From IMG/VR virus record IMGVR_UViG_3300010938_000950, positions 145,767 through 209,766 of that record: a DNA stretch of 64,000 nt; one strand, given 5' to 3'. Shown one piece after another: positions 1,946 through 63,829 of the stretch. Every line of letters begins with the position of its first letter. The stretch's first letter is position 1. Made by a program: the position numbers and the translations under genes. Below the pieces are notes generated by a model. It made no database searches, was not told where the DNA came from, and saw only the letters and a program-made list of their open reading frames with translations.

Positions 1946-2148
1946 CTCTCTTCTTGCCACGGCGTGAGTGCTCCGCCCCGTGCGATCCCGAGGCCAGTGG
2001 GTCTCAAAAGGGACACGGGGCAGAGCGCTCGATTCTCTTAGCCCTGCGCATGGGCTAAGCCTTTGCACGAAGTGCTGCGGCACCCGCAAGGGGTGCAGCC
2101 TTGTGAGGGCGGGGAGACATGACTCTCCCTAATAGTGCGCAGTGTTCT

Positions 2149-2230
2149 CGCCAGTGTCACTGAAAAGCGTGCGGGGCTGCGCACGGCCTTCCAAGGTTGT
2201 GACACAAGGGTTCGACTCCCTGACTGGCGA
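2149..2230 (+). ncRNA. tRNA-Gly(TCC)-derived tRNA-like element with expanded anticodon loop and D-region insertion
   Basis: Acceptor CGCCAGT/ACTGGCG, T loop TTCGACT, anticodon arm ACGGC-CTTCCAAG-GTTGT (8-nt loop), no encoded CCA. Confidence 0.6.
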
Positions 2231-2270
2231 CTAAGCTTCTCCCATTCATAACCATCGCAGGGAGAATATC

Positions 2271-5772: not shown

Positions 5773-5795
5773 TGGCACGGTAATCGCAGGGTGCA
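5773..5795 (+). promoter_or_regulatory. sigma54 (-24/-12) promoter with GGGTGCA tail
   Basis: TGGCACGGTAATCGCA-GGGTGCA; upstream GTAGGGAAARGTRGT shared with the site at 886. Confidence 0.7.
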
Positions 5796-6993: not shown

Positions 6994-7722
6994 ATGGCGA
7001 ACAAGAACAAGATCGAATTGGGTGACGTGGTGAGCCTGGGCTGGGATGACGGCTATCACACGGCCACGGTCTCTCAGGTTCACAAGGACGGGACGGTGGA
7101 TCTCTTCCGTCCCTACACGGCCACGGCTGACTTCTCATGTGCAGGGCGAGAGGAGGGATCTTCCTCGGTCATCTGCTACGTGGGAATCGAAGAAGTCAGG
7201 GGAGTCAATCCCGACAGGCTCAAGCTCTTGCGCAAAGGTAAAGAGCTGAGGTAAGCAGAGGTTCCCATTCATGGGATGGTGTGTGGGGTGGATGTTAGAA
7301 AGGGCGGATGGCCCAAGTCTATCCCCACACAAGCACGCTGAGCTAGTGCTGGACATGTATTGGCCGCCAAGGTACAGTGGTATCTTGGATATAGGGTTCG
7401 ACTCCCTATCGTGTCTCCGGGAGGTTCGCCTCCCATTCACAACCGACAAGGAGCGAATGACATGGACATCTTCGAGATTCTCTCCAAGGACGAACGTGTC
7501 ATTGTCTACTCCTCCCAAGAGGAACGGACACTCATCACCTGGAATCAATCCCTCACACTCCAATACTGGCGCCCTGTTGTCAGGAGGTTTGAGAGTGATT
7601 ATCCCAAGGGACACTTCGATCCCAACGACTGGGAAGAGGTGAATGTGCGCACACTCTCGAATGAGCCCAAGGACTACAAGGCTGCACGAGAAGCAGCCAT
7701 CAGGTGGTACACCGGGTCCTAG
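6994..7722 (+). other. Hypothetical ORFs 6994..7254 (SH3-like) and 7462..7722
   Basis: SD-preceded, downstream of 11-mers at 6962 and 7430. Confidence 0.7.
7351..7417 (+). ncRNA. D-armless tRNA-like element
   Basis: Acceptor GGACATG/CGTGTCT, T arm ATAGGG-TTCGACT-CCCTAT, 9-bp hairpin CCAAGGTAC/GTATCTTGG with 4-nt loop in place of the anticodon arm. Confidence 0.6.
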
Positions 7723-13250: not shown

Positions 13251-13319
13251 GCATATCCCAAACTGGATGACCAAGCGACTAGCTATCGCAAGGTGTGGGT
13301 TCGATTCCCACGATATGTA
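13251..13319 (+). ncRNA. Degenerate tRNA-like element (anticodon loop CT-AGC-TA)
   Basis: Acceptor GCATATC/GATATGT, T arm GTGGG-TTCGATT-CCCAC, D-loop-like AACTGGAT without a stem, 4-bp anticodon stem. Confidence 0.6.
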
Positions 13320-26368: not shown

Positions 26369-27226
26369 AGATCAATCACCTGTTCCCCGCCCTTCTCCTT
26401 CTTGCTGGTTGCGCTGGTTGGCAGCGTGACTGCAACTCCAGTGTTGCCTCCTCGTTTGGTGGTGACTGGATCGTTCTCCAGTATGGCATGGATGGAACAC
26501 CCATCAACTGCTGGAAGCTGAAGGATACTGCCATCAGTAACGAAGCTCACACCGATGGGATCTTCTGGCAGGATCCTGGTGGACACCTGGTTCACATCTC
26601 CGGATGGTACAACCGAGTCCAAGTCAACAACGGGGACTATGCTGGTGCGGCCAAGTCCATCGGAATCGAGCTGGATCGTTGTGTTGGCGGAAAGTATATG
26701 GCTCCGGTCAAGACTGGTTTCTATGACTGGAGACTGAATACTACGCCTTGGGCGTACGCTCAAAACTGAGATGTCCAAGAAGAAACACAAGAAGAAACAT
26801 AAAAAGCATCGTGAATACATTCTCATTGAGGGACACGTTCTCAATGAGAAGTCTGGAAAGCTAGAACCATACACTAAGAAGGTGTATACCGACAAGCGTT
26901 GGTAGGCGGCTCCCATTCACGACGCATCGAAAGCGAAAGCCATGAGCGAACAACGAAAACAACTTCTGCGTCTTCTACGAAAAGAGCGTGAGGAGTTGCA
27001 GTCCAGGGTGAGTGAGCTGTCAGAAGAGATTGCTCAACTGGATCTGGCAGAACGTCGTGAGGAGCATCCCTGTATCTGCGTCAAGCTGAATCAGGACATC
27101 GAGATTTACGACATGCAAGAGCAAGAGCGCCGAGGGCGAGTGCCTCTTAGTGCCGGTGGTTTCGTAGCTCATACGCTGACGGCTCTGAAGAACTGTCCAA
27201 CGTGCAAGGGAACCGGCAAGCCATGA
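26365..27226 (+). other. Lipoprotein 26365..26769 (LLLAGC) and coiled-coil/zinc-finger ORF 26942..27226
   Basis: Lipobox; CPTCKGTG motif. Confidence 0.65.
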
Positions 27227-27783
27227 ACCTCTGGTTCATCAGCGATACCCACTTCGGACACGCCAACATCATCAAGTATTCCAACCGCCCTTTCAAGGAC
27301 GTGGATGAGATGAACGAGATGATGATTCAGGAGTGGAACAAACTAGTCAAACCAGAGGATGAGGTCTACCATAACGGAGACTTTGCCTTCATGACGTATG
27401 ACAAGTTTCGTCAGCTTACCTGGAGGCTCAATGGTCGAATTTATCTGCAACTCGGCAATCACGACAAGACGATCATCCAGCATCGGAATCACCTTCTGAG
27501 GCAAGGAAAAATTGTCAGCATCGAGAACTATCGAGAGTTGAAGGTTGCTGGTCAGATGATCGTTTTGTTCCATTACGGACAGCGTGTGTGGAACAAGTCA
27601 CATCACGGAAGCATTCACCTCTACGGTCACTCCCATGGCTCCTTGCCGCCGCATGGCAAGTCAGTTGACATTGGAGTGGACTGCAAAGAGATCACCCACG
27701 AGTACCGACCCATTCACTTGGATGAGGTACTCACTTACATGAGCAAGCGAGAGCAAGCCGTGGTGGATCATCACGGCATGTAA
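27223..27783 (+). CDS. Calcineurin-like metallophosphoesterase
   Basis: SDTHFGH, GDFA, GNHD, FHY and GHSH motifs. Confidence 0.92.
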   Translation: MNLWFISDTHFGHANIIKYSNRPFKDVDEMNEMMIQEWNKLVKPEDEVYHNGDFAFMTYDKFRQLTWRLNGRIYLQLGNHDKTIIQHRNHLLRQGKIVSIENYRELKVAGQMIVLFHYGQRVWNKSHHGSIHLYGHSHGSLPPHGKSVDIGVDCKEITHEYRPIHLDEVLTYMSKREQAVVDHHGM

Positions 27784-33985: not shown

Positions 33986-34055
33986 TCCCATCATGGTATG
34001 ACGCCAATTGTGTAGCTACATGGCGTGGGGATGGTTCGATTCCACCCGGTGGGAC
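33986..34055 (+). ncRNA. D-armless tRNA-like element
   Basis: Acceptor TCCCATC/GGTGGGA, T loop TTCGATT, ACGCCA/TGGCGT stem with a 14-nt loop. Confidence 0.5.
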
Positions 34056-34124: not shown

Positions 34125-34251
34125 CCCCGTACGTATTGGTGCGAGCGTTAGTGCAAGTAATCAGTGTTCTAGAAGCTGATGATGCCAAGAGTCTGCTAGC
34201 GACTCATACGGAGTGAAACTAACTAGCTGGGTTCGAGTCCCAGTGCGGGGT
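34125..34251 (+). ncRNA. tRNA-like element with a 65-nt structured insertion at the anticodon position
   Basis: Acceptor CCCCGTA/TGCGGGG, T arm CTGGG-TTCGAGT-CCCAG, stem GTTAGT/ACTAAC enclosing internal hairpins. Confidence 0.6.
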
Positions 34252-38784: not shown

Positions 38785-38790
38785 GAAATC

Positions 38791-42748: not shown

Positions 42749-43096
42749 ATGTTGGATCTTTTGCGGGTGGCCGCAGAAGTTGCCGATCTGTCAACCGACA
42801 AATATAGAAAGGCTTTTATCGGAGCCGTATCTGTTCGTAAGGATGGCACGTTGGTTTACAGTCGAAACGGTGGAAACCCAAACTCGCATGGCAAAATGCC
42901 ATCGGTGCATGCAGAAGCGCGTGTGCTTAGGAAAAGCGGATATGGAGCAACTGTTTATGTTGCTCGTGTCTTGCGGAACGGAGAGTTTGCAATGGCAAAG
43001 CCTTGTGGACATTGCCGTGCCATCCTTCGAGCCCATAAAGTAGAGATGGTTTATTATACTACCGGACCAAACTCCTGGGAAGGTTTTAGACCGTGA
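42749..43096 (+). CDS. Zn-dependent cytidine/dCMP deaminase-family protein
   Basis: HAEARVL...KPCGHC. Confidence 0.88.
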   Translation: MLDLLRVAAEVADLSTDKYRKAFIGAVSVRKDGTLVYSRNGGNPNSHGKMPSVHAEARVLRKSGYGATVYVARVLRNGEFAMAKPCGHCRAILRAHKVEMVYYTTGPNSWEGFRP

Positions 43097-50712: not shown

Positions 50713-50910
50713 CAACGATAGAAAAGGTAGACTATCTCCTAACGATCGTTGACATTATTCTATGTCTGATCGATATGGGATTGATAGTCTACCTTTTCTT
50801 CTACCGATTCCCGCCCGAGAAAAAGAAGAACAAGTTCGATAAGTTTGGATACTACCGTAGACGAGGAAGGGTATTCACAACATCTAGGCGTCGATGATAT
50901 ATTATGGTGC

Positions 50911-51402
50911 ATGCCATATAAAAACATTGAAGACCGTCGAGAATGCCTTCGTAAATATCGTAATGAGAACCGCGAGAAGATACGTGAACAAACACGTAAA
51001 CAATCCTTAGCTTGGCAAAAGGCGCATCCTGAAGCCGGGCAAAAATGGAAAGAAGAAAACGCCGAGAAAATCAAAAAGATTGGTCGCAAATCCAATCTCA
51101 AAAAAGTTGGCTGGACAATAGAGGAATTCGATTCAGCGTTTGAAAAACAAAAACAATCCTGTTGGATATGTGGCGTTGAACTTACCAAAGAGAAGGGTTT
51201 TGGTAATACTGCCCATGCAGATCATAATCATACAACGGGTAAAAAGCGTGGTATTCTTTGCACTAAGTGCAATCTAATAGAAGGGCACATGAATAAATGT
51301 GCGATACCACCAAAAGAATTTCTCGAAAAACTTTTAGAATACTATAAGGTATTCGATACGGAAGGTAATCAAGATGAACTTCATGGCATGGCCGGAGATT
51401 GA
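50911..51402 (+). CDS. Free-standing endonuclease VII-like homing endonuclease
   Basis: QKQSCWICG...HADHNHTTGKKRGILCTKCNLIEG; basic N-terminal region; overlaps the RNA ligase start. Confidence 0.85.
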   Translation: MPYKNIEDRRECLRKYRNENREKIREQTRKQSLAWQKAHPEAGQKWKEENAEKIKKIGRKSNLKKVGWTIEEFDSAFEKQKQSCWICGVELTKEKGFGNTAHADHNHTTGKKRGILCTKCNLIEGHMNKCAIPPKEFLEKLLEYYKVFDTEGNQDELHGMAGD

Positions 51403-52375
51403 ATCGTTCCATAACATCAGGAAATATACTTCACCAGCCGCTCATCCTGAAATCTTGAACGGCAATACTATTGTCGATTATAGACCCAAGGTTAAGTTGC
51501 ATGGTACGAATGCGGCTGTTCAAGTCCATGAGGATGGAAGCATTGTGTGTCAGAGTCGCGAGTCTATTATCACCCGTGAAAAAGACAATGCTGGCTTTGC
51601 TAAGTGGGCACACTCCCAACCTAATTGGGATCTAGCCAAAGGCCATATTCTCTATGGCGAGTGGTGTGGACCTGGTATTCAGAAGGGTGTTGCCATTGCC
51701 CAAATTCCTCGCAAGGTGTTCGCTATCTTTGCAGCGCGTCCTTTGGATGGCAGCGACAAATTGATTGTTGAACCGGACGAGCTTCGTGTTTTGATCGAGA
51801 ATACTAAGTTCAATATTCCTGACGTGTATGTTCTTCCCTGGTACAACGAAGGGCTGGAAGTTGATTGGTCTGAGACAAGTGAAGAGCTAACCAAGGATGT
51901 TAATCTAATCAACGAGTGGGTTAGTGCTGTGGAAGCTAATGATCCATGGGTCGAAGCGACCTTCAATGTCAAGGGGACTGGAGAAGGTTTGGTTTTCTAT
52001 CCTCGTTCAGATGAACATCTCGGCTTCACTAACTTCAATAACTTGGTATTCAAAGCCAAGGGAGAAAAGCATAAGAACATTGCCACGGCTAAGCCTGCGC
52101 AAGTGGATGCAACTGCGGCGGCCAGCATCGATGCGTTCGTGGCTATGGTTCTTACCGAAGCTCGTCTGGAGCAAGGTGCTACCAAGGTGTCTGCTGATGG
52201 TGCACTTACCTATGACATGAAGAACACAGGTAAGTTCGTCTCCTGGGTAAGTGCAGATGTAGAGAAAGAAACTCAGGATGAGCTAGCCGCCAGCAATCTC
52301 ACCTTCAAACAGGTGCAGAAAGCCATCAGTGATAAGGCTCGTGCCTGGTATCTTGCCAAAGCTAAGGAGCTATAA
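51374..52375 (+). CDS. RNA ligase (Rnl2 family)
   Basis: KLHGTN, YGEWCGPGIQKG, FAIF, EGLV and FKAK nucleotidyltransferase motifs. Confidence 0.88.
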   Translation: MNFMAWPEIESFHNIRKYTSPAAHPEILNGNTIVDYRPKVKLHGTNAAVQVHEDGSIVCQSRESIITREKDNAGFAKWAHSQPNWDLAKGHILYGEWCGPGIQKGVAIAQIPRKVFAIFAARPLDGSDKLIVEPDELRVLIENTKFNIPDVYVLPWYNEGLEVDWSETSEELTKDVNLINEWVSAVEANDPWVEATFNVKGTGEGLVFYPRSDEHLGFTNFNNLVFKAKGEKHKNIATAKPAQVDATAAASIDAFVAMVLTEARLEQGATKVSADGALTYDMKNTGKFVSWVSADVEKETQDELAASNLTFKQVQKAISDKARAWYLAKAKEL

Positions 52376-52376
52376 G

Positions 52377-52982
52377 ATGGGCGAAGAGATTAGGGGTATG
52401 GTGGTTTACCACCGCAAGTCACTAAAGCGAGGTAAAATTACTGCCTCTAATCAATTCACCGGACTTATTGCAGTCCAATGGGATGATGGTGAAAAGAACT
52501 TTGCTCATGTTAGCGAGCTAATGAGTGAGCAACTTTTCAACGAACTACAAGAACAAAATAGGAAAGATCAAATGGCTCTCAAAGAAGAACAAGCAACCAT
52601 TGGTGCAATCGTTTTCAAGAACTCTGACGAAGCACCTCTAAGGAAGGGCAAGATTGCCGGACCTGTAGTCAATGGTGTTGCCATTGTCGAATGGGATGAT
52701 GGTCAGCTTGCTAAGGTTGCCATCAAGACTCTTCTTGGTCAAGTCGAGGGCATGGCTGAGAATCAACGCTTGCAAGACGAGAAGGATCGTTTGGAGCGTG
52801 AATTCGAGGAAGTACAAGCTGAGGTCGAGGAGAAGCTTTCTGCCGCGGCCAAGCTAATCAACGAGGCTGCTGCTCTTGCCGATCGTAAAAACGTTTCTAT
52901 CATGGATATGAGCGAAGCTACTTACGAGCTAGAGAGTGCCATGGAGAATGCGGGCTGGAATACTTCTTCCTGGCACTGCTAA
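52377..52982 (+). CDS. Tandem SH3-like plus coiled-coil protein ending GWxxSSxxC
   Basis: Two G.I.....V.WDDG repeats; ends ENAGWNTSSWHC. Confidence 0.75.
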   Translation: MGEEIRGMVVYHRKSLKRGKITASNQFTGLIAVQWDDGEKNFAHVSELMSEQLFNELQEQNRKDQMALKEEQATIGAIVFKNSDEAPLRKGKIAGPVVNGVAIVEWDDGQLAKVAIKTLLGQVEGMAENQRLQDEKDRLEREFEEVQAEVEEKLSAAAKLINEAAALADRKNVSIMDMSEATYELESAMENAGWNTSSWHC

Positions 52983-52991
52983 GAGGGAACA

Positions 52992-53674
52992 ATGGATCTG
53001 GAACAAGAATTCCAAAAACTAATGGATGAAGCTGTCCAGAAGGTACAGGCCAAGCAGGCAGCCGGCGAGCTGTCTGTTGAAGAGGCTGACGACCTAATCG
53101 ATATCATCGCTACACGCAGGCAGAAAGGTGCGCGTGCATGGAGCTATAGCGATAACTGCTATACTGATGATGAAGACTATGACTATGATGGATCGGATGA
53201 TTCACGTGGTTGGCAGCGCTCATCTTGGTGCGGAGATAACGGATGAGCTTATTCAAATACGAAGTAGGCATGCGTGTACGCTATCGCGATGATGAAACTC
53301 GCAAAGGCGAAGTCACCGAAGTAGAGGACGAAAACGAAGTTCGCGTACTTTGGGATCATCGTAAAGATGAAGGACACAAGTGGTGTGAGACGCGAGAGAT
53401 CATGCCTGATACACTGGAGGCTGCCCAGCAGATTTCCAATCTGAATCGAAAGATTCAAGCCAAGATCGATGAGGCTACCTCTCTACTCGAACAGGCATTC
53501 AAGGCTTGGCGTACAGCCAACGCTATGGAAATGGAAGGGACTGATAACCCTGGGCCTGATGATGGTTACTTCGAGGGAGCCTATGCTCTTCGTGGGAATG
53601 AAGAGCTGGATCTTTCTAAGTTCGAGGAAGTGGTAGAGCAAAATGGTTGGAGTACCTCGTCTCTCTACTGTTGA
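52992..53674 (+). other. ORFs 52992..53246 and 53243..53674 of the same GWxxS..C family
   Basis: End GWQRSSWC and GWSTSSLYC. Confidence 0.7.
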
Positions 53675-53901
53675 CCATATCATCAAGGGCCTCAAAAAGA
53701 CCCGAGGTGAATTGGTTAGATTTGCAAAAGCTCTTCCAGATGAAGATGCTTATGCAACTCCCTATTCAATTCTATCAGATGGTGTCAAACATATAGATGA
53801 TCTAATTGATAATCTAAAAGAATCAGTTAGAGATGCCAATCAATACCGCAAAGAAAACCCAGAACAATTCCCCAATCGAGCCAGAAAGTGGTGTATGATC
53901 A

Positions 53902-54828
53902 ATGATTCTCGTCGGAAGTCGCGCTCTAGCACTGAGGATGCCACAAGCACTGATCCGTAAACCTCTTGACTTTGATTGGGTTTGTACTCAGGAAGAGTTT
54001 GACCAGTGGATGGAAAAGAATCAGCACAAGGTCAATCCAACCAAAGTCTATAAAGAAGAGTGCCGACAGGGTCTTTACAAAATGATTGTCGAGGGCAGTA
54101 CCAACTGCGAATTCGAAATCATTGATCCTGAGAAAAGTTCTGGAATTCTTCAGCAGTTGGTAGAGAATAATTCCGAAAGTTTGGAGACGCCGTTTGGCTG
54201 GATTCCATCTTTCGATCTTCTGTTTGCTATCAAGCAGTCTCACCGCTATCTGCGAAATAGCCCGCACTTCTGGAAGACCTTGACCGATTGGCATCTCATG
54301 CGTAGGTTTGGGGCAATCATTCGTCCCGAGCATAAGAGCTTTCTCAAAACTCGTGAGGCCGAGACTTATTGGTATAAGCATCCGAAGCTCAACGTATCTA
54401 AGGATGACTTCTTCCAAGATGATGGTATCCAGTATGTATGGGACCATGACGATATCCACAAGTCAGTTGCAGTGGGTGAGCGACCAGCTTATACCTACTA
54501 CCTGAAGGATGGAGCGCAAGTCGATTGCGACAAAGATAAGTTCTTCGCCTTGCCTCAAGAGATTCGCCTCAATGGAGTAGTGGAAGAGGCCGCCGTGCTG
54601 GCAATCGAGCGCAGCTTGGTACCGCATCCCGGCGTGTGGACGCCTGAGTATGCATGGAAGTTTGCGCTTTCTAAGGTATGCTCTAGCATCACATCGGGAT
54701 GGTTCCGTCAGTTCGCCTACGAGAATGCCCCGGAAATTCTCAAATTGTATCCGAAGGGATATTGGGAGAAGTTCCAGCAAGACTGTGCTGATGGCAAAGT
54801 AAAACCTTTTACCGGAAGCAAGTACTGA
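53902..54828 (+). CDS. Conserved large-phage protein with nucleotidyltransferase-like N-terminus
   Basis: LVGSRAL...DFD motif; KxSH and YxHDxIH blocks typical of this phage family (from memory). Confidence 0.6.
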   Translation: MILVGSRALALRMPQALIRKPLDFDWVCTQEEFDQWMEKNQHKVNPTKVYKEECRQGLYKMIVEGSTNCEFEIIDPEKSSGILQQLVENNSESLETPFGWIPSFDLLFAIKQSHRYLRNSPHFWKTLTDWHLMRRFGAIIRPEHKSFLKTREAETYWYKHPKLNVSKDDFFQDDGIQYVWDHDDIHKSVAVGERPAYTYYLKDGAQVDCDKDKFFALPQEIRLNGVVEEAAVLAIERSLVPHPGVWTPEYAWKFALSKVCSSITSGWFRQFAYENAPEILKLYPKGYWEKFQQDCADGKVKPFTGSKY

Positions 54829-55012
54829 TGAGTGAATACGGAAAGAAGTGGGAAGATATTCGTTTGATTAGAGAGGAGATCAAACGGTTAGTTCCTACTG
54901 CAAATGTCAATAGCTTCAATGAAGCATCAGATTCTTTAGAGAGCTTCAAATCTCTTCTAGATATTCTAATGATGCGATGGGAAGTATTAGAAGCAGAGAT
55001 TAAGGAAGAGCC

Positions 55013-55498
55013 ATGAAATTTTCTATTGGTGATAAGGTAGTTCAAAAGACTTCCGTTCAAGCACATACCAACTATCCGGTTGAAATCGTAGTTGGTTTCT
55101 TGGGTGATGCCGTACTCACTATGAGCTGGGGTGATGGGTTCGGCGATGAGATTCGCCACTATGACTTCTATGAAGATATCAAGCCTGGTGATCGTAGCTG
55201 GCGCTCAGCTATCTCAAGGTATCAAGAGTCAGAGCTTTTGACTCCGGAAGAAGTGATTGTGCAGCTTCGTAAACTAGAAGACGAGCAGTCTAAGCTAGAA
55301 GCAGAATTCGAAAGCGTACGCACACACGTGCAAGAGAAATTAAACCAAGCTGCCGTTCTTGTCAAAGAAGCTACTTCTTTGGTGGAACCTACGGGTAAAG
55401 ATTTCTATGATCTCACCGAAGAATGCAGAGAGTTGCACTTTGCTCTAAGCAAAGGCGGATGGTCTCATTCTACAATGAAGTGCAAATATGGACGATGA
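55013..55498 (+). CDS. SH3-like plus coiled-coil protein ending GWSHSTMKC
   Basis: MKFSIGDKV N-terminus; family C-terminal motif. Confidence 0.7.
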   Translation: MKFSIGDKVVQKTSVQAHTNYPVEIVVGFLGDAVLTMSWGDGFGDEIRHYDFYEDIKPGDRSWRSAISRYQESELLTPEEVIVQLRKLEDEQSKLEAEFESVRTHVQEKLNQAAVLVKEATSLVEPTGKDFYDLTEECRELHFALSKGGWSHSTMKCKYGR

Positions 55499-55681
55499 AT
55501 TTGAATTTCTATACAAAGAGTACCTAGAATATTCTAGGTTGTTCCATTGGTATCATGGAAGTTCTTTTTCCTTTTTCAAAGGTAAAGCTTCTAAAGTAGA
55601 AGCAGAAAGGTATAGGTATCTTTCTAATTATTACTTTGAAAAAGCTGTAATCAAAGCTCGAAAAATGGTAATGCCTAAGAG

Positions 55682-56191
55682 GTGATCATGTTTAAGTATG
55701 ATCAGAATGTTGAGCGCTACGGAATTAAACTGGTTAACGACCGTGTTATCCGCAAAGAGGCTCAATTTTCAACCTATAAGCATTTTGAATTTCTTTCTAG
55801 ATTAGCTAGGCATCTAATTGCCAACCCTGATCCTACTGTAGTTCCTGTTTATAAATTCGAAGTTCTGGAAGAGGCTCCCGAAGGAAAACTGTGGGGCACG
55901 TTTAGATACGCATATGAAATGATGCGCCTGCCTATGCTTTCACGTGAGGAAAAGAGCGCTATCAATACATTCTTCCAACACAGATATAATATGAATAGGT
56001 CTGAAGACCCCTACTTGCTTCGTGATAAGCGGGAGTTTCCGGAGCTAGCTAAGTTCATGTCGAAAGTTTTCGACGATGATAACTATACCGATCTTCACGA
56101 CGGGAACTTCCTAAAAGATGAAGAAGGGAACTATCGTATCATTGACCTGGAGGGATTCTCTCGTTACCCAGGTGTTGGCCATCTAGAGTAA
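55682..56191 (+). CDS. Minimal protein-kinase-like fold protein
   Basis: V.K, DLHDGNF and IIDLEG motifs. Confidence 0.6.
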   Translation: MIMFKYDQNVERYGIKLVNDRVIRKEAQFSTYKHFEFLSRLARHLIANPDPTVVPVYKFEVLEEAPEGKLWGTFRYAYEMMRLPMLSREEKSAINTFFQHRYNMNRSEDPYLLRDKREFPELAKFMSKVFDDDNYTDLHDGNFLKDEEGNYRIIDLEGFSRYPGVGHLE

Positions 56192-57448
56192 TAAATTATG
56201 AATATCAAAGCTGCGCCCGTAATCAAATTCGGGTATGTAATGCTAGCTATTAATATGGCTCTATCTAGCTACTTCTGGTTGTTTGGTCATGATGAAGATG
56301 ATCGTTTCCATACAGCTTTGTTTATGGGCGGCTCCATGCTCTGGATAATCATGATCTTGGTATGGTATAAAGTTCAAGAAACTGAGGAGTAAAACGTGGA
56401 AGATTGGGCTGAGCTAGATGAAGACAAGTGTGCTTGCCATGGTTGTGGCTGGGCAGAAGTTTCAAAAGATGAATGGGTAGAATGCCCCCTTCACTTCGAA
56501 GGTCAGCTTCATCCTGATACGCAGGCTCTGCTACTGGATGAGCCTGAACGTTTAGTTGAAGAGGAGCGTAAATCACGGCTTCGGTTTCAAATCAGAGAAG
56601 CGCGAGCCAAGATTGTTCTTGCCCAAGAGCAACTTAAAGAAGAGCAGAGCAAGCTAGCTCGTCTTGAACTAGAGCTAATCAATAGGACGCCCACTGTTAA
56701 AGCTATGCGAGCAGTCGTTCCACCCCCGCTTCCTATTCCTTCTGAGCCAAAACCATTTGAGCTTACGGAGACAGATTTTCTATGAGAATCTATGATGCTA
56801 TTGATGCTGCGGCTAAGGCCCTAAAGTCTGGAGCACATCCTAATATTCTAAGGATGGCACTAATGAGTGACGGCTTTCCAGCCTCTAAAGTAGAAGTTAT
56901 TTTGGGATGGGCTAACCAATCCAACAAAGGAAAACAAATGAAAACGATTGAAGAAATGAAGGAACTCTTTCCATGGGAAGAGGGCATGGGAGAAATCAGT
57001 GGTTTCGGGGGAGGCTATGAGGAAGCCTGTCGAAACATGGTTTACTCCGGCCTTGCTTGGCTGGAGACCAAACCCAATGCCGAACTGCGTGCTATTGAGT
57101 ATAAGAATGTCTTTGGTATTCTTACTCCAGACAATGCTGATACTCAGGAATTGGACGATGCGGTGGCGGCTGGGGAACCCGGTTGTTCAGGTGCAATGCA
57201 TCATGCTGCCATGAGTCATGTTATGTTCATTGCTAAGAATGGTTGGAACAAATACGTCTCTGAAATGAAGAAACGCGGTTAATCATGACCAAGAAAGATT
57301 ACATCAAGGCCGCCGAGATTGTTCGACAGGACCACAAGAAGAATGGAGATATCTTCTCCAAACTTATGGAAGAGTCTTTCGTCAAACTTTTCCGACAGGA
57401 TAACCCGCGCTTCGATGAGAAGCGTTTCCGTGAAGCCTGCAAGGGAGC

Positions 57449-57787
57449 ATGAGTATGGATACAATTACGTTTGACGATTTCGTCAAAGCAGACATGCGTG
57501 TAGGTACAATCACCTCTGCGGAGGCTGTGCCCAAGAGCAAGAAGCTTCTCAAACTTTCTGTCTCATTCGGTCCTGAGATTGGTACTCGCACTATTCTTGC
57601 AGGTATTGCCGAAGCCTACAATCCAGAAGGCATTGTTGGACTTCAGATTGTTGCAGTAATCAACCTTCCGCCCCGAGCTATGATGGGTATCGAGTCTCAT
57701 GGTATGCTTCTAGCTGGCAGGTCTGCAACTGGTCAACTCATTCTCGTCTCTCCTAATGGTATTGCCGAGGGAGAGCGAATCGGCTGA
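57449..57787 (+). CDS. Trbp111/CsaA-type OB-fold tRNA-binding protein
   Basis: FDDFVKADMRVGTI...KLLKL...RTILAGI...NLPPRAMMGIESHGMLL. Confidence 0.9.
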   Translation: MSMDTITFDDFVKADMRVGTITSAEAVPKSKKLLKLSVSFGPEIGTRTILAGIAEAYNPEGIVGLQIVAVINLPPRAMMGIESHGMLLAGRSATGQLILVSPNGIAEGERIG

Positions 57788-59168
57788 GAGGCGCGGCCTC
57801 CCATTCACGGGAGGCCGTTGCAAAAGGAAGCGCCCATGATTAGGTTGAGAACCAAAGTAGGAAATGGTAGAGTTTTTACTCTCTACTTCATGGGTAAATG
57901 GGTAACTCTCATCAATGATGGTACCAGAGCTTCTTCTGTTGATGCAGACAACCTGATGATGGCAGGAGCTAACCATCTGGCAGCCGCTACAAAACTCAAG
58001 GAGATTATGGATGACAGAGGAAGATTTGCTGAACAGCTACTTCACAGAGAAAGATATTCCGGGAGTCTCAGCTCAGGAGTTTCAGACGGCAGTGATGGGG
58101 CTAATCGAGAAGGGTCTCATCGAGATGGTGGAAGCGAACGGGATCAAAATCTACCGCCCAACTCTTCTTCTGAAGAAAATCAAAACACATCTGAACTCGG
58201 ATCCCAAAACGCAGAGTTAAATGATGGACAAGAAAGAGTTTGAAGAAAAGCTAATCAAAGACTTTCCTGGCCTCTATGCTGATATGTATGGTGATGCCAG
58301 TAAGACTTGTATGGCCTGGGGAGTAGAAATTGGACCAGGATGGTATGATCTGGTTTATGATCTCTCCGCTAAGTTAAACGCCATTATTCAAACCTTTCCA
58401 AAAGAATACGCCCAGAATTTTAGGTTCTCCCAGATAAAAGAAAAGTTGGGCGGCCTGCGTATTCATATGACAAAAACCTCGCCCGAGATGAGAGAACTTA
58501 TTCATAAGGCCGAGTCTGATAGTTATCATATTTGCCATCGTTGTGGACAACCTGGTAAATTAGTAAAAGCTAGTTGGCTCTATACATCCTGTAAAGAGCA
58601 CGCTAAACAAGAACACAAAAACCAATTCTGAGGAAAAATGAGCAACAAGAATTTGCCCCTGGACGAGCAGCTTTTCACCGCCGAACACTTTGCGCCCCTT
58701 CCAGGAGCAGTGCTTGGCCTACAGTTCAAGGATGTGACGCTGAAGGGAAAGGTTGGGGACTTCGAGTCCGGAACCAAGTTCTCTTATGCGGTCCTCCTGG
58801 GTGATGCGTCTGCCCTGGTCCTGATCGATGAGAAACAGGAGGAACACGCATTCCGCCTGAGTGTGAGTGTGGGTGAGCGCATCGATGCGGCCGAGCTTCA
58901 TGAGCCTCATGATGAGAGCTGTGATTGCGGCCACGATCACTGACAATGAAATGGATTGTTTCTTGGCAAACAGTGGTTCATCATAGTGATGGTACATGGT
59001 TTGAAAAAACTGAAAGGCACCATCACTCAAAAGAGTTTGATGATAAAGAAGAGGCATACCAATTCAGAAATGATTTGAGGAATGCAAGATATGTTGTAAA
59101 TGTTGAGCTTAAAAGAGAAGTATCTTTAGACGATATTTACAATGCAATCGCAGCCAAAAACTAAGACC

Positions 59169-59200
59169 TATATGCATACACAGACGTGTGTATGCATATA
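59169..59200. repeat. Perfect 14-bp inverted repeat
   Basis: TATATGCATACACA-GACG-TGTGTATGCATATA directly after a stop codon. Confidence 0.85.
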
Positions 59201-59700
59201 GAGCTAACGAGTACGGTTAGCTTTCGTTCTAGCGGATCGCAATGAAACTAGAACGGGTCAAGGGGACTAACATGCTGCCCCTAAGCTTGCGTATGCGAGC
59301 CGCATGAGGTTGCCAACTAACCATAAATGTTGGGGCGCAGGTGGTCACGCCTATACCTACCCCAGTTCTTGTTCATTATTACTGCGTCTTAATAATGTTC
59401 TTTAGTCAACTCTACAACGACCGAGAGAAAACTGTAGACATCCTTGCTAGCCTTCAGATGTATGTGAACAGCTAGGGGCACTCCTGCCCATACCTGCGAG
59501 CGTGAGTTTTCGCTTCCGTTTTGAGTACGATACACATAGGCGTGTGCTTAGATACGAACTTGCAAGCGTATCGGTGCAGGCGCCTATAAAACGGAGGATC
59601 AATTTTATTGGAGAGTGTATTGGGCACTTGAGCGCCTCATGACGAAGATGGAGATAGTCATGACACCCACTGTAAGACCGTGGTGTATAACGGTCTGAAC
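59201..59700 (+). ncRNA. Candidate large structured non-coding RNA upstream of tRNA-Glu
   Basis: About 500 nt with no ORF of 60 aa or more on either strand and many stem-loops (GAGCTAAC/GTTAGCTT, CGTTCTAG/CTAGAACG, CATTATT/AATAATG, GATACG/CGTATC, AGACCG/CGGTCT). Confidence 0.5.
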
Positions 59701-59701
59701 T

Positions 59702-59776
59702 GGCCCCATCATCTAGTGGTTAGGATATATGGCCTTCACCCATAGTACAGGGGTTCGAATCCCCTTGGGGTCACCA
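59702..59776 (+). tRNA. tRNA-Glu(TTC)
   Basis: Full cloverleaf GGCCCCA...TGGGGTC-A-CCA, D loop AGTGGTTAGG, TATGG-CCTTCAC-CCATA, AGGGG-TTCGAAT-CCCCT; C at position 33. Confidence 0.92.
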
Positions 59777-60982
59777 TGAAAGAAAAGAAAGAAAAATGTA
59801 AGCACCCGAAAATTCCTTCCTATGAATTGGAAGAGCAAGAAGCAGCCAATACTTTGATTGATCAAATCAATCGTGGTGATGTGGTCGCTTATGGATCTCT
59901 TTGTAGATTGGCTGTCTCTGTTGTTAGAGACGGCAGATTCTATCGTGAAACTTGTGAGAAATGTCATGGACTCAGTTCCTCTACAGAAAATTCAGAAGAA
60001 AGCTGAAGCGTATGATTCTACACTTCTCGCTACTGATCCGCGATTTCGCAGAGTTGTGATCCTTGAGCATGAGGACGGTTCTTATCTACAATTCGATAGC
60101 GCATTTTTGATGCGTGTAGATAGAGAGTGGATTGTATGCTTTACAGAACACCATGGTTTTCATGTGTATCATGCTGACGACCTATTTGCATATTCTCAAT
60201 ATGAAAGGTTGAATGTATTGGAGGAGCTTCCATGATTGATGTTGAGGCTACATACAAAAACATTCGTACTCTTTACCAAACGGTTTCTGGTAAGGGCGAT
60301 GCAGATGTTTCTGTTACGTACAAGGGCACTAGTTACGGTGTAACTAAATCATGGCATGCCAAAGTGGACGCGCGCGAGATCAATCATGAGACTCATGATG
60401 GTGCCTTGACTGGCTTGTTAGCTCTACTCAAAAAAGAACTAGCCGATAAGACCAAGTCAGCAGAAAATGAAGCTGCCCGTTTGCGCTCAGCTCTCAACCA
60501 ATTGGGGAACTAATATGATTCGTATCAGATACTCTGATAATAACATCGGGGAATATAAGAACGTGGATGTGGCGAACTTCATGGCTCTTAATACTATGTT
60601 CTCTACATCTGGTAAAATCATTCCCATTGAGGCTGTAGAGGTCATTGGGGTGACTACTGGTGGAGTTTCGGTGGAACGTATCCTCAAGATTAAGCTTGGG
60701 GTTATTGAATACGACTGAGGGGCACGGATTCAAAGTTTAATGAGCCCGCACTTGCCCGCCATATAGCCGCCCTAGGAGCATATACGCACATGAGAAAGAT
60801 TCAAGATGCCGATGTAGTCGGTAAGACAATCAAGTCAATCGATAATGGTTCTGTCAACGTTCTTCGTTTGACATTTACAGATGGCACTAGTCTGGAACTA
60901 TGGGCGGAAGATGCCGTCTATACCCCAATGGGTAATATTCCAGGCATCTTTGTGGAAGATTCCACACCGCAAGAAGGTTAAT

Positions 60983-61696
60983 ATGAACGGTGCAATTTAT
61001 GTCTCTGAGTCTGGTAATACCAAAATCAATGGCTCCAAGAAGGTAGATGCCACCTATGTCTCTATCAAGGCTTCCTGTCCCAAGGATTGCTCTTTGATGG
61101 GCGAAGGTTGCTATGCTGAGTTGGGCTATGTGGGTATCACCACTCACCGATTGGATGATGAAGCCAAGGGTATGACTCCATTGGCGGCTGCCCGAGCTGA
61201 GGCTAAAGCTATCGATGAGTCTTACAAAGGTGGACCAGTACCTGCTGGTCGTGACCTTCGCATTCACGTTGCTGGCGACTCTCGTACCCTGTTAGGAACG
61301 CGAATAATCAACAAGGCCATTGGGCGCTGGAAGCAGCGCGGTGGTGGTGCAGTCTGGACGTATACTCATGCATGGAAGCATGTTCCCCGTGAAGAGTGGA
61401 GTCATGTTTCTATTCTCGCTTCCGTTAATCATGTTGGCGAAGTAGAGGATGCACGTGAGCAAGGGTATGCGCCTGCCATTGTGGTCCCAGAATTTCCTGG
61501 TGAGAAAGCTTTCCAATTGGATGGCTGTGACACCAAGTTCATTCCGTGCCCCAACCAGACTCGTGGTGTTGGTTGTACTGATTGTCGTCTCTGTTTCAAT
61601 GCAGACCGACTTCATGACGGCAACTTTGGCATTGCCTTTGCTGCACACGGAGCTAAGAAGGAACCGCTCAAGCGACATCTCAACGTGCTCCAATGA
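60983..61696 (+). CDS. Phage gp88-like, radical-SAM-like Cys-cluster protein
   Basis: SCPKDCSLMGEGCYA (Cx3Cx6C), RIHVAGD, WTYTH, CP...CTDCRLC, F..HG. Confidence 0.65.
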   Translation: MNGAIYVSESGNTKINGSKKVDATYVSIKASCPKDCSLMGEGCYAELGYVGITTHRLDDEAKGMTPLAAARAEAKAIDESYKGGPVPAGRDLRIHVAGDSRTLLGTRIINKAIGRWKQRGGGAVWTYTHAWKHVPREEWSHVSILASVNHVGEVEDAREQGYAPAIVVPEFPGEKAFQLDGCDTKFIPCPNQTRGVGCTDCRLCFNADRLHDGNFGIAFAAHGAKKEPLKRHLNVLQ

Positions 61697-62689
61697 AAGC
61701 TAAAGACTATTTAGCTAAACTACGTCAGGCTCCCAGAATGTTTGCCTCTAATAAAGAATCATTCTGTGCGCAGGTTATTACTGCACTCATTATGGATGAT
61801 ATAGAGTTTAAAATTCCGGGGCCTGGTAGTGATAGCGGCAATTTTTATGCCAAACATATTGGCAGACAAGGTAGCGCCATCATAGGATGTAATGACCCTT
61901 TTGATGATGAATGGGCTCACGCCGTAGTAGATGATGCTCTTTCATTTATTGGAAAGTAATATGACTGAACGAGAAATGTTTGAGAAATCTTTTCAACGCC
62001 CCAAGAACTACTTCAAGCTAAGTGCTCGTGAACAATGGGATATCGATGCTAGACTTGGTATTCTAGATTGGAACGGTGATGGTCTAACAGAAGAAGACTT
62101 GAAGCGTTTCGATGAACATTACGAGAAGTAAGATGTACTCTACTACTAATGGATGCACATGCCATATGATCCAATCACCAGGCCAACCTTTCCTACAATG
62201 TATCTCATGTCGAAGTCGAGCGGAACGAGCTAAAGAAGGAAAGACTTGCGACCGTTGTGGCGTGGGCGTACACACACATGATGGAGATTCTGAAGAGATG
62301 GGCGGACTTTGCAGCGAGTGTTACTATGACCAATGAAAAGCAAAAGGCAATTAGAACGCTGATGCGTGAACCTCTAATATTCCATGAGAATATTGAGTGG
62401 CTAGGCCGATGTCTGTCGGTATTACATCCAGAACGATACTGTATTATTACAGTTGGAAAATCTTTTCATATTCGTTTGTCACCTTCTGCTCTAGAAGATA
62501 TTGAACGAATACCAGAGAAAGAATTCTTTACTATCTTTGATGATATAAAGAAGGACATGTACGAAGACCGGCGCAAATGCACAACCATCATTGGTCTCCT
62601 TTCAACTCTTCAATCCGAAGAGGAAGAGAAGATTAAGAAGCGAATCGCTCTAGAAGAAGACGAGCGAAGCAAATATCGAAGGTACTGAA

Positions 62690-63829
62690 ATGACTGACTG
62701 GAATCCCCAAATTGTTCGAATTGAAAAGGTAGAGAAGCATCCGTATGCAGATGCATTGGATATTGCTACCGTGCTCGGGGACTATCCGGTCATCGTCAAA
62801 CGAGATGAATATAAAGAAGGCGATCTAGCTGGCTATATTCCCATCGATTCTATTGTTCCTGATACAGAGCAATTCCATTTTCTATGTCCTAAGATTACTG
62901 AGAAGTATGAAGAGGTTGAGGACAACGAGATTGTAACTAAGACTCGTACGCTCGGCCCTAAGTTCCCAGTTGGTTCTGTTCCTGAGAAAAATCGTATCAT
63001 TAAAGCAAAGAAAATTCGTGGAATCTATTCGCAAGGAATGCTCGTTTCTATCCAGAGCCTTCCATTGGTTCCTGCCGGAGATATGAAAATCCTAGGATGG
63101 TTTAATCCTGGCGATACAATTACAGAGCTTCTTGGACTCAAAAAATGGGAAGAGGAAGAAGAGGAAAATCTTCCTGGTCTTAAAAAGACCGGCCGCAATA
63201 ATGAGAAAGCACCTCAAGGATGGTCTATTCCTCATTATGATATTGACTCAGTGCGCAAGGTAGTTCGTCTTCTTCAGCCCGGAGAAGAGATTGTTCTTAC
63301 TGAAAAGATTCATGGTTCCAATGCCGGATTCTCACATGATGGCACACGCCTATGGGTAAAGTCTCGTAACTTCTATAAGAAGCAAGATGAAGAAGATATG
63401 TGGTGGGATATTGCTATCCGCTACGAATTGGAGAAGAAGCTTTCTCAATATCCTGGTCTTGTTTTCTTTGGGGAAGTTTACGGTCAAGTAAAAAAATTCC
63501 GATACGATACTGTTATCGAAGGCGGGCGTCTGCTCACACGTATACGTTTCTTTGATGTATGGGATACTAAGAAGGGACGATACGTTGACTATGATGATCG
63601 TATTAAGATCATTACAGATGCTGGTCTGGATACCGTTCCAGAGTTGTACCGTGGTCCATGGCTTGGAAAGGAACAAATGTATCCTTTTGCTGAGGGCTTG
63701 ACAACCCTAGGTGGCAAACATATTCGTGAAGGTTGGGTTCTCAACACCGTCAAAGAAAGGTTTGAGCCCGAACTAAATTCCCGTATGCAAGTAAAGTTGG
63801 TGGGGGAAGGTTATAACCTTCAGAAGTAA
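62690..63829 (+). CDS. RNA ligase, DRB0094 family
   Basis: N-terminal HPYADAL/KIRGIYSQG OB-like region; EKIHGSN, FGEVYG, FFDV, REGWV and KLV motifs. Confidence 0.9.
   Translation: MTDWNPQIVRIEKVEKHPYADALDIATVLGDYPVIVKRDEYKEGDLAGYIPIDSIVPDTEQFHFLCPKITEKYEEVEDNEIVTKTRTLGPKFPVGSVPEKNRIIKAKKIRGIYSQGMLVSIQSLPLVPAGDMKILGWFNPGDTITELLGLKKWEEEEEENLPGLKKTGRNNEKAPQGWSIPHYDIDSVRKVVRLLQPGEEIVLTEKIHGSNAGFSHDGTRLWVKSRNFYKKQDEEDMWWDIAIRYELEKKLSQYPGLVFFGEVYGQVKKFRYDTVIEGGRLLTRIRFFDVWDTKKGRYVDYDDRIKIITDAGLDTVPELYRGPWLGKEQMYPFAEGLTTLGGKHIREGWVLNTVKERFEPELNSRMQVKLVGEGYNLQK

What the first reader, a model, noticed from the sequence alone, without database searches (positions are those of the whole stretch)
51374..63829. 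RNA-repair and tRNA-handling kit matching the tRNA mimics
Seen: an Rnl2-type ligase (51374), a nucleotidyltransferase-like protein (53902), a kinase-like protein (55682), a Trbp111-like protein (57449), tRNA-Glu (59702) and a DRB0094-type ligase (62690), with a phosphoesterase and a deaminase elsewhere in the window. Established: phage ligases and phosphoesterases repair tRNA cut by anticodon nucleases, and Trbp111 binds the tRNA elbow, which is exactly the part retained by the six mimics. Inference: a combined decoy-plus-repair system against tRNA-targeting defences, with anticodon-less mimics as non-cleavable or sacrificial substrates.
Basis: inference. Interest (0 to 1): 0.68.

Follow-up and report, generated by a model that had tools for sequence, protein, structure and literature searches.

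The report
Megaphage RNA-ligase and tRNA gene neighbourhood

Summary
All six listed features exist at the stated coordinates:
- an Rnl2-type ligase
- a Pol-beta-type nucleotidyltransferase (DUF7277+DUF7275, MenT-like fold)
- a minimal protein-kinase-like enzyme, which is not a polynucleotide kinase
- a free-standing Trbp111/MetRS-C-like tRNA-binding protein
- tRNA-Glu(UUC)
- an Rnl5/DRB0094-type ligase

The phosphoesterase (27202-27783) and the deaminase (42749-43096) are also real.

The window is the last 64 kb of a 210-kb fragment, about 49% of a ~450-kb phage. Five relatives keep this neighbourhood in synteny. Single members drop out, though: Rnl2 in one relative, Rnl5 in another, Trbp111 in a third.

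Complete relatives carry 37-57 tRNAs. The closest one (G004) holds a separate compact repair island: RlaP, two T4-type Pnkp, an Rnl1-type ligase and a further ligase. The other (G002) shows RlaP and two Pnkp. That island lies about 315 kb from the neighbourhood in G004 and about 150 kb in G002. No end-healing enzyme lies in the window region.

The six tRNA-like elements are real. At least one is conserved with compensatory changes. They lie 17-60 kb upstream in a different gene block, and nothing ties them to the ligases or to Trbp111. No RNA data exist.

New leads: the DUF7275 NTase sits near RNA ligases or Pnkp in several phage lineages, and the local tRNA-Glu carries a conserved C33.

The parts
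51374..52375 (+). Rnl2-type ATP-dependent RNA ligase (333 aa), motif I K41-LHGTN
53902..54828 (+). Pol-beta-type nucleotidyltransferase, DUF7277+DUF7275, MenT/AbiEii-like fold (308 aa)
   Evidence: It lies near RNA ligases or Pnkp in other phages.
55682..56191 (+). Minimal protein-kinase-like enzyme (169 aa; K25, D137, N142, D155)
56396..56785 (+). Conserved ORF of unknown function that follows the kinase-like gene (directly or one short ORF later) in all five relatives where the site is visible
57449..57787 (+). Free-standing Trbp111 / MetRS-C-terminal-like tRNA-binding OB-fold protein (112 aa)
   Evidence: It is rare in sequenced phages, found in 20 of 50,697 records.
57797..57807 (+). Copy of the promoter-like CTCCCATTCAC motif, directly after the Trbp111 stop codon
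59165..59701 (+). Non-coding stretch before the tRNA. Positions 59321-59779 are 79% identical to G004. It holds a perfect 16-bp hairpin at 59167-59202.
59702..59776 (+). tRNA-Glu(UUC) with encoded CCA and an unusual C33 (anticodon loop CCUUCAC)
60881..61696 (+). DUF7227 protein, conserved in relatives, function unknown
62690..63829 (+). Rnl5 / DRB0094-type RNA ligase: N-terminal OB domain plus nucleotidyltransferase domain, motif I K206-IHGSN
27202..27783 (+). Metallophos_2 phosphoesterase (phrog_547), outside the finding's span. In G002 its homologue lies 3.7 kb after Rnl5.
42749..43096 (+). Cytidine/dCMP-deaminase-like protein (115 aa), outside the finding's span
2148..2232 (+). tRNA-like element 1: acceptor stem plus T arm, with an aberrant middle. 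It has an orthologue in G004 with compensatory helix changes.
7333..7414 (+). tRNA-like element 2: a D-like hairpin with GG in its loop, and a 9-bp hairpin with a tetraloop in place of the anticodon arm
13251..13319 (+). tRNA-like element 3: Rfam tRNA model 22.3 bits, below the threshold of 29; has a 7-nt loop
19417..19490 (+). tRNA-like element 4, whose 3' end overlaps a CTCCCATTCAC motif. G004 has a positional counterpart at 431250.
33987..34055 (+). tRNA-like element 5: a 10-bp hairpin with a tetraloop in place of the anticodon arm
34161..34250 (+). tRNA-like element 6: the weakest, with a good T arm only. Nothing corresponds to it at the syntenic place of G004.

Best explanation
The stretch is the distal part of a conserved accessory-gene neighbourhood of a clade of ~430-480 kb soil and groundwater megaphages.

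It encodes a second, loosely organised set of RNA-end-joining and tRNA-support functions:
- two nick-sealing RNA ligases (Rnl2-type and Rnl5-type)
- a MenT-fold Pol-beta nucleotidyltransferase that may add back or modify 3'-terminal nucleotides, in the way RlaP does
- a dimeric Trbp111-like protein that binds tRNA in a structure-specific way
- an extra tRNA-Glu(UUC) with a variant anticodon loop

Proposed mechanism (inferred):
1. Host tRNases cut tRNAs or other structured RNAs.
2. Where needed, the ends are healed by the Pnkp, RlaP and phosphoesterase genes found elsewhere in complete relatives.
3. One of the lineage's several ligases seals the break, with Rnl2 and Rnl5 acting on nicks held in a duplex.
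4. The variant tRNA-Glu and the large tRNA arrays replace what cannot be repaired.

The kinase-like protein most likely phosphorylates proteins, in the style of T7 gp0.7 host takeover, and is not part of RNA healing.

Shown: gene identities, folds, catalytic motifs, synteny, and gene loss in relatives. Inferred: the substrates, and any cooperation among the genes.
For: - Gene identities and catalytic motifs.
- Synteny of NTase, kinase-like gene, g56396, Trbp111 and ligase in G001, G002, G004, L028 and L010.
- The NTase family lies within 10 kb of Rnl2 or Rnl5 in 10 of 11 clade loci. In 11 further loci of other jumbo-phage lineages it lies within 10 kb of Rnl1 + Pnkp.
- Complete relatives carry 37 and 57 tRNAs plus a tmRNA. 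G004 has a canonical island of RlaP, two Pnkp, a PF09414 ligase, an Rnl1-type ligase and a Metallophos protein; G002 has RlaP and two Pnkp.
- The kit-adjacent tRNA-Glu has C33 in both G000 and G004, while the array copy in G004 has the normal U33.
- This pattern (tRNAs, several non-redundant ligases, PNK-HAD, a ligase-associated NTase) is described for jumbo phages in PMC7824862. Phage tRNAs with anticodon-loop changes that evade tRNases are described in PMC10264068 and PMC11555353.
Against: - No end-healing enzyme lies in the region or in the whole 210-kb record.
- The genes are separated by about 25 unrelated ORFs.
- Rnl2, Rnl5 and Trbp111 are each missing from at least one relative, so they are not an obligate unit.
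- The natural substrates of Rnl2- and Rnl5-type ligases are not established (own knowledge).
- Conserved synteny in phages can reflect common descent alone.
- No expression data exist.
- The DUF7275 NTase also occurs in many phages with no ligase detected nearby, 24 of 45 loci with my limited profiles (context).
Confidence: 0.6

Rival explanations
1. The anticodon-less tRNA-like RNAs act as decoys or sacrificial substrates for host anticodon nucleases. The Trbp111-like protein binds their elbow. The two ligases, the NTase, the kinase and the phosphoesterase repair cut tRNAs. Together they form one counter-defence system.
For: - The tRNA-like elements are real and lie on the coding strand.
- Element 1 keeps its helices through compensatory changes in G004. 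Elements 2 and 4 have positional counterparts there.
- Five of the six keep a GG-containing loop or linker plus a canonical T loop, which are the ingredients of an elbow (seen by eye).
- Trbp111-like genes are rare in phages, yet five of six clade relatives have one.
- G004 has both the elements and Trbp111.
Against: - The elements lie 17-60 kb from the ligases, in a separate GC-rich cassette block. They usually sit just before the next CTCCCATTCAC motif, which fits a transcript-end or processing role equally well.
- The kinase has a protein-kinase fold.
- No healing enzyme is nearby.
- In G004 the canonical repair island is elsewhere in the genome.
- G002 and G001 have Trbp111 but lack the GC-rich block.
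- No RNA data exist.
Confidence: 0.1
2. The genes are functionally unrelated neighbours inherited together. The ligases serve phage RNA or DNA transactions other than tRNA repair, for example sealing nicks in RNA:DNA hybrids or processing phage transcripts. The Trbp111-like protein simply boosts aminoacylation or stability of the phage's very large tRNA set. The NTase and the kinase are host-takeover enzymes.
For: - Single members are lost in relatives.
- Many unrelated ORFs are interspersed.
- In G004 a compact canonical repair island exists elsewhere.
- No phage MetRS is present, so the Trbp111-like protein must act in trans on tRNA or with host enzymes.
- The nearest folds to the NTase are MenT toxins, which block tRNA charging (function from own knowledge).
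Against: - All RNA-related genes of the record cluster within 12.5 kb.
- The NTase family lies beside Rnl1 + Pnkp, or beside Rnl2/Rnl5, in separate lineages.
- A variant tRNA-Glu is conserved inside the block.
Confidence: 0.25
3. The tRNA-like elements are decaying tRNA pseudogenes and the local tRNA-Glu is the last survivor of an eroded tRNA array. On this view any link to the ligases is accidental.
For: - Relatives carry many dispersed true tRNAs on the same strand.
- Relatives also hold T-arm sites that ARAGORN does not call.
- Element 3 scores 22 bits on the tRNA model.
- Element 6 has nothing corresponding to it at the syntenic place of G004.
Against: - Element 1 keeps all four helices in G004 at 78% identity, with helix-preserving changes and an invariant hairpin.
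- Elements 2 and 4 keep an acceptor stem and T arm at syntenic places despite diverged sequence.
- The G000 record probably lacks tRNA arrays only because it is a partial genome.
Confidence: 0.05

Closest known systems
Jumbo-phage RNA-repair and tRNA-provision systems (Iyer et al. 2021, PMC7824862), with T4 Pnkp + Rnl1 as the prototype
   Same: Several non-redundant RNA ligases, many phage tRNAs, PNK-HAD healing enzymes, a ligase-associated Pol-beta NTase and phosphoesterases, read as a counter to host tRNases. The lineage has all of these.
   Different: In this window the ligases are Rnl2- and Rnl5-type, not Rnl1. There is no Pnkp nearby. The NTase is DUF7277/DUF7275, not RlaP PF10127. A Trbp111-like protein and a C33 tRNA-Glu are added. 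The genes are spread over 12.5 kb, not arranged as an operon.
[quoted passage not shown]
   Same: A Pol-beta-type NTase found next to RNA ligases and Pnkp in phage genomes. RlaP adds one or two nucleotides to damaged RNA 3' ends.
   Different: The window protein does not match PF10127. Complete relatives have a separate true RlaP as well. The nearest solved folds are MenT1 and MenT3. Its activity is untested.
MenT / AbiEii tRNA nucleotidyltransferase toxins (M. tuberculosis MenT1, MenT3/TglT)
   Same: The best structural neighbours: Z 11.0, 144 residues aligned at 3.9 A for MenT1, and Z 8.2-8.8 for MenT3. The GS...DxD...E motif is shared.
   Different: Sequence identity is about 11-13%. No antitoxin partner was looked for. 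The gap to aminoglycoside and lincosamide NTases (Z 7.5-8.1) is small, so the substrate cannot be inferred.
Trbp111 (Aquifex aeolicus), the MetRS C-terminal domain, and CsaA
   Same: A free-standing OB-fold protein of about 111 aa. Full-length match to 1pyb at 2.6e-23. metG_C_term scores 111 bits.
   Different: It is phage-encoded, with no phage MetRS present. It falls just below the NCBIfam cut-off. CsaA-type chaperones score nearly as well, so tRNA binding is inferred and not shown.
Rnl5 ligases (Deinococcus DraRnl/DRB0094, Naegleria NgrRnl) and T4 Rnl2
   Same: The same domain orders and motif I lysines.
   Different: Both fall below the NCBIfam equivalog cut-offs: 114.5 against 151 bits, and 25 against 197 bits. 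They are divergent family members whose activity is untested.
T7 gp0.7-type phage protein kinases
   Same: A small phage protein with a protein-kinase fold and intact catalytic Lys/Asp/Asn/Asp residues.
   Different: It is only 169 aa, and nothing matched in the Pfam copy I searched. Its targets are unknown.

Membership tests
Rnl2-type RNA ligase | Nucleotidyltransferase domain with a motif I lysine (KxHGxN) | tested here: met
   PF09414 covers positions 7-171 of 171 at 1.4e-12. K41-LHGTN aligns to the T4 Rnl2 motif I EKIHGTN.
Rnl2-type RNA ligase | Rnl2-specific C-terminal domain | tested here: inconclusive
   The alignment to T4 Rnl2 runs to residue 301 of 334, but overall E is only 2.7e-4. 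phrog_548 matches over the full length at 1e-47. TIGR02307 scores 25 bits against a cut-off of 197.
Rnl5 (DRB0094/NgrRnl) RNA ligase | N-terminal OB domain followed by the nucleotidyltransferase domain, with no C-terminal appended domain | tested here: met
   PF21189 OB at residues 8-77 and PF09414 at 199-361 of 379. Both parts align to NgrRnl.
Rnl5 (DRB0094/NgrRnl) RNA ligase | Score above the curated equivalog cut-off | tested here: not met
   TIGR02306 is the best model at 114.5 bits, but the cut-off is 151.15. This is a divergent member.
Trbp111 / tRNA_bind OB family | Free-standing tRNA_bind domain of about 110 aa | tested here: met
   PF01588 at 2e-22. 1pyb at 2.6e-23 over residues 6-111.
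Trbp111 / tRNA_bind OB family | Homodimer that binds the tRNA elbow | not testable with these tools
   Needs gel shift or structure work. CsaA chaperones score nearly as well.
T4-type heal-and-seal tRNA repair (Pnkp + ligase) | A 5'-kinase / 3'-phosphatase (Pnkp) encoded with the ligase | tested here: not met
   The 210-kb record has no AAA_33, no PF00149 and no tblastn match to the relatives' Pnkp. Pnkp genes do exist in G002 and G004, 150-315 kb from the neighbourhood. The record is only about 49% complete.
RlaP NTase (PF10127) | Match to PF10127 | tested here: not met
   The window protein has no match, and neither does G000 as a whole. A true RlaP exists in G002 and G004.
Pol-beta superfamily minimal NTase (MenT/AbiEii-like) | hG[GS] ... 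DxD ... E catalytic motif on the NTase fold | tested here: met
   Invariant G5 S6 D23 D25 E72. MenT1 at Z 11.0.
Polynucleotide 5'-kinase | P-loop (Walker A) kinase fold | tested here: not met
   The 55682 protein has a protein-kinase fold. Its sequence shows no GxxxxGK[ST] (by eye).
   No RNA runs hold the sequence. Co-occurrence is inconclusive: G004 has both, G001 and G002 have Trbp111 without the GC-rich block, and the L028 genome is not held.

The most novel reading that the evidence does not exclude
A megaphage clade combines four things into a tRNA-centred counter-defence: (a) conserved, anticodon-less tRNA-like RNAs, (b) a rare phage-encoded Trbp111-like elbow binder, (c) a C33 variant tRNA-Glu, and (d) extra Rnl2/Rnl5 ligases with a new MenT-fold, ligase-associated NTase family (DUF7277/DUF7275). 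In this reading the tRNA-like RNAs titrate or trigger host tRNases, while the enzymes rebuild cut tRNAs.
Probability: 0.1. Interest if true: 0.85.

Novelty: new variant of a known kind. Interest (0 to 1): 0.48.

Why it matters
Phage tRNA arrays and RNA-repair enzymes are now seen as answers to the many bacterial defences that cut tRNA. This locus adds three testable pieces to that picture.

- A widespread protein family of unknown function (DUF7277/DUF7275, found in 733 phage records) has a MenT-like nucleotidyltransferase fold. It sits beside Rnl1 + Pnkp or beside Rnl2/Rnl5 in separate phage lineages. That makes it a candidate second 'ligase-associated' RNA-end NTase.
- A free-standing Trbp111-like tRNA binder is rare in phages but is kept in this clade.
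- A conserved tRNA-Glu has C33 in place of the near-universal U33, next to a normal copy elsewhere in the closest relative's genome.

The result also shows that the attractive 'decoy plus repair kit' reading goes beyond the evidence.

Tried and rejected
- Megablast of the 12.5-kb stretch against GenBank phages found nothing.
- The sigma-70 promoter scan showed no excess (20 found, 21 expected), and the terminator scan was weak.
- ARAGORN with introns or relaxed thresholds gave mostly spurious calls. I used it only to bound the six elements.
- My own acceptor/T-arm scan was no better than shuffles: 4 hits against a shuffle mean of 2.2 and a maximum of 6.
- Rfam at E up to 10 found only element 3 as a weak tRNA hit.
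- The six elements share only the T arm with the relatives' true tRNAs, so no parent tRNA could be named.
- PF00149, AAA_33 and RlaP were absent from the record. MetRS was absent from G000, G001, G002 and G004.
- Paper searches for Trbp111 in phages and for DUF7275 found nothing useful.
- No RNA sequencing run holds the sequence. Laying DNA contigs on 2100-7500 (5,401 letters, within the operators' limit) showed strain indels but no covariation data for the elements.
- The MAFFT alignment of element 1 with its orthologue is not structure-aware. I therefore compared independent folds and did not use the pair-count tool.
- I did not use the big protein searches (search for homologous proteins, the search of protein representatives), because family scans, tblastn and folds settled the proteins.
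- I named no other genetic code.
- Complex prediction was not used, because no protein-protein claim is made.

Full report
**What the window is.** The window is the last 64 kb of one 209,766-bp IMG/VR virus record. CheckV rates the record about 49% complete. The record has a single tRNA gene. Its base composition is split: GC is 0.36-0.41 over the first 140 kb, then 0.54 falling to 0.45 in the window. Near-identical DNA occurs in soil and groundwater metagenomes. No RNA run holds it.

**Check of the observation.**
- 51374-52375 is an Rnl2-type ligase. It matches PF09414 at 1.4e-12 and phrog_548 at 1e-47 over the full length. The best solved structure is T4 Rnl2. tblastn finds 192 phage records, the best-ranked mostly annotated 'RNA ligase 2'.
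- 62690-63829 has the Rnl5 architecture, an N-terminal PHA02142 OB domain followed by PF09414. Its best NCBIfam model is RNA_lig_DRB0094 at 114.5 bits, below the cut-off of 151. Its best solved structure is the Naegleria Rnl5 ligase. Both ligases keep the motif I lysine.
- 57449-57787 matches Trbp111 1pyb over its full length at 2.6e-23, just ahead of CsaA. metG_C_term scores 111 bits.
- 59702-59776 is tRNA-Glu(UUC).
- 53902-54828 is DUF7277+DUF7275. Six homologues keep G5 S6, D23 x D25 and E72. The model (pLDDT 75) is closest to the tRNA-modifying NTase toxins MenT1 (Z 11.0) and MenT3 (Z 8.2-8.8), then to LnuA and ANT(2''). 'Nucleotidyltransferase-like' therefore holds.
- 55682-56191 matches no family. 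It folds (pLDDT 85) as a minimal protein-kinase domain with K25, D137, N142 and D155 invariant (Atlas neighbours). It is kinase-like, but not a polynucleotide kinase.
- The phosphoesterase is 27202-27783. The deaminase is 42749-43096 and is dCMP/cytidine-deaminase-like.

**Relatives.** Searching IMG/VR with the Rnl5 ligase, the NTase and Trbp111 found a clade of very large phages. I fetched three of them whole:
- G004: 480,838 bp, rated complete.
- G002: 447,763 bp, rated complete.
- G001: a 95.7-kb fragment.

I also used partial loci from a 340-kb contig (L028/L061/L093) and a 67-kb contig (L010). The table gives gene presence from local tblastn and HMM searches.

| Relative | Present in the neighbourhood | Missing or different |
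|---|---|---|
| G004 | Rnl2, NTase, kinase-like, g56396, Trbp111, tRNA-Glu and DUF7227 at 467-480 kb, same order as here | No Rnl5 anywhere in the contig; the contig ends 520 bp after DUF7227 |
| G001 | NTase, Rnl2, kinase-like (split in two frames), g56396, Trbp111, Rnl5 | - |
| G002 | Trbp111, kinase-like, g56396, deaminase, NTase, Rnl5 and the phosphoesterase, all within 16 kb | No Rnl2 in the whole genome |
| L028/L061/L093 | Deaminase, NTase, kinase-like, g56396, DUF7227, Rnl5 | No Trbp111 between the flanking homologues; no tRNA-Glu |
| L010 | Trbp111 and the NTase | Short fragment |

The neighbourhood is ancestral to the clade. The two ligases and Trbp111 are nonetheless each dispensable.

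**The lineage's other RNA genes.** G001 has at least 17 tRNAs. G002 has 37. G004 has 57 plus a tmRNA.

G004 also holds a compact canonical repair island at 139-156 kb:
- RlaP (PF10127)
- two T4-type Pnkp (AAA_33 + HAD_PNKP)
- a 260-aa PF09414 ligase
- an Rnl1-type ligase (PF09511)
- a Metallophos protein

G002 has RlaP at 189.5 kb and two Pnkp at 194-197 kb. None of these is in G000. By synteny, however, G000 corresponds to only the last ~210 kb of a G004-like genome. Their absence is therefore most simply a matter of the contig being partial.

This matters for the interpretation. At least in G004, the textbook heal-and-seal module is a separate island, and G002's RlaP and Pnkp genes also lie far from its neighbourhood. 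The ligases in the window are additional ones.

**The NTase family.** By tblastn, 733 GenBank phage records encode a homologue, and all those listed are annotated 'hypothetical'. I examined 45 IMG/VR loci with 10-kb flanks.
- 10 of 11 clade members have Rnl2 or Rnl5 nearby.
- 11 loci from other jumbo-phage lineages (about 360-kb contigs, a 109-kb contig and a 58-kb fragment) have an Rnl1-type ligase and a Pnkp within 10 kb.
- 15 loci (14 of these plus the GenBank phage locus L009) have a metallophosphoesterase nearby.

My profiles came from few sequences, so the remaining loci are not shown to lack ligases. The protein does not match RlaP. This points to a second ligase-associated NTase family, in the way RlaP was first defined by gene neighbourhood (PMC7824862; 10.64898/2025.12.29.696909). 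It is an inference from neighbourhood, and the lineages are few.

**The tRNA-Glu.** Its anticodon loop is CCUUCAC, so position 33 is C and not the near-universal U. The orthologue at G004 477320 has the same loop, while its anticodon stem differs through compensated changes. G004's other tRNA-Glu(UUC), in the main array, has CUUUCAC. Phage tRNAs with altered anticodon loops are reported to escape tRNA-cutting defences (PMC10264068, PMC11555353). Whether C33 does so is untested.

**The 'six mimics'.** GGTTCGANTCC occurs 7 times in the window, against 0.18 expected, all on the + strand. One of these is the tRNA-Glu. The other six, at 2209, 7395, 13298, 19470, 34033 and 34230, are the only further copies in the record.
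- Most fold with an acceptor-like stem next to the T arm and an aberrant middle; the last (34161-34250) shows only the T arm.
- Several have a hairpin with a 4-nt loop where the anticodon arm should be.
- Element 1 has an orthologue at G004 422204-422289 (78% identity). It has the same four helices. Two helices are kept through different sequences, and the hairpin GCCUUCCAAGGU is invariant.
- Elements 2 and 4 have positional counterparts at G004 425448 and 431250.

They look like maintained RNAs, not decaying pseudogenes. They lie 17-60 kb upstream of the ligases, inside a GC-rich block of small gene cassettes, each preceded by CTCCCATTCAC. That motif has 56 copies on the + strand. The elements usually sit just before the next motif copy, which fits transcript-end processing or stabilisation at least as well as a decoy role.

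G001 and G002 have Trbp111 but lack this block. The one relative lacking Trbp111 is not held whole. The proposed link therefore cannot be tested by co-occurrence, and no RNA data exist.

**Verdict.** Four parts of it are not supported:
- The 'kit' is loose.
- It lacks healing enzymes.
- It wrongly counts a protein kinase and a nucleotide deaminase as RNA-repair parts.
- It is not tied to the tRNA-like RNAs by any evidence.

I rate it a new variant of a known kind, with moderate interest. That interest rests mainly on the NTase family's neighbourhood, the rare Trbp111-like gene and the C33 tRNA-Glu.

Noticed in passing
window 1-57807 (densest in 1-33000): The motif CTCCCATTCA(C) occurs 56 times on the + strand of the record and 3 times on the - strand. 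It usually lies 20-30 nt before a Shine-Dalgarno sequence and ATG of a small gene, in a block with GC 0.50-0.64. G004 has the same block at 420-460 kb; G001 and G002 lack it. It looks like a phage-specific promoter or cassette boundary.
   Followed up: partly
window 2231-2448 and 6744-6962: Metagenome contigs of related strains skip exactly one small cassette between two copies of the motif. The first deletion starts right at the 3' end of tRNA-like element 1. Cassettes are therefore gained or lost at these repeats.
   Followed up: no
window 59702-59776; G004 477320-477394: The tRNA-Glu(UUC) has C at position 33 (loop CCUUCAC), conserved in the closest relative. That relative also has a normal U33 copy in its main tRNA array.
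   Followed up: partly
window 59165-59701: This 537-nt non-coding stretch lies before the tRNA. It holds a perfect 16-bp hairpin (59167-59202), and 59321-59779 is 79% identical to G004. It may hold another RNA or a leader.
   Followed up: no
G004 139141-155751; G002 189517-197157: In the closest complete relative (G004) there is a compact canonical RNA-repair island: RlaP, two Pnkp, a PF09414 ligase, an Rnl1-type ligase and a Metallophos protein. G002 has RlaP and two Pnkp in the corresponding region; the rest of that region was not scanned. These genes are not in this record, probably because the contig is partial.
   Followed up: yes
L120 3187-13288 and 10 similar loci: In other jumbo-phage lineages the DUF7275 NTase lies in a cluster of Rnl1, Pnkp, then the NTase, then a metallophosphoesterase.
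   Followed up: partly
G002 212881-213035; G004 50073, 172924, 173183, 170047: Relatives carry suppressor-type tRNAs (anticodons CUA twice, UUA once), and G004 carries a tmRNA. I named no other genetic code and did not look for recoding.
   Followed up: no
whole record G000 and G004: IMG/VR labels both 'provirus'. The GC-rich cassette block near the contig end may have been taken for host DNA. The motif also occurs in the lower-GC part, so the block belongs to the phage.
   Followed up: partly
window 37636-39342, 50845-51402, 25358-26368: Other recognisable genes are SprT-like + DUF2786 + DUF7168, a RadC-like JAB protein, endonuclease VII, and an FGE-sulfatase-like protein. Four further families were detected in a batch Pfam scan of the window's ORFs but not located: HNH endonuclease, CMD, phosphoribosyltransferase and DUF7695.
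   Followed up: no
G001 72980-73460: The kinase-like gene of G001 is split over two reading frames, by a frameshift or a sequencing error.
   Followed up: no
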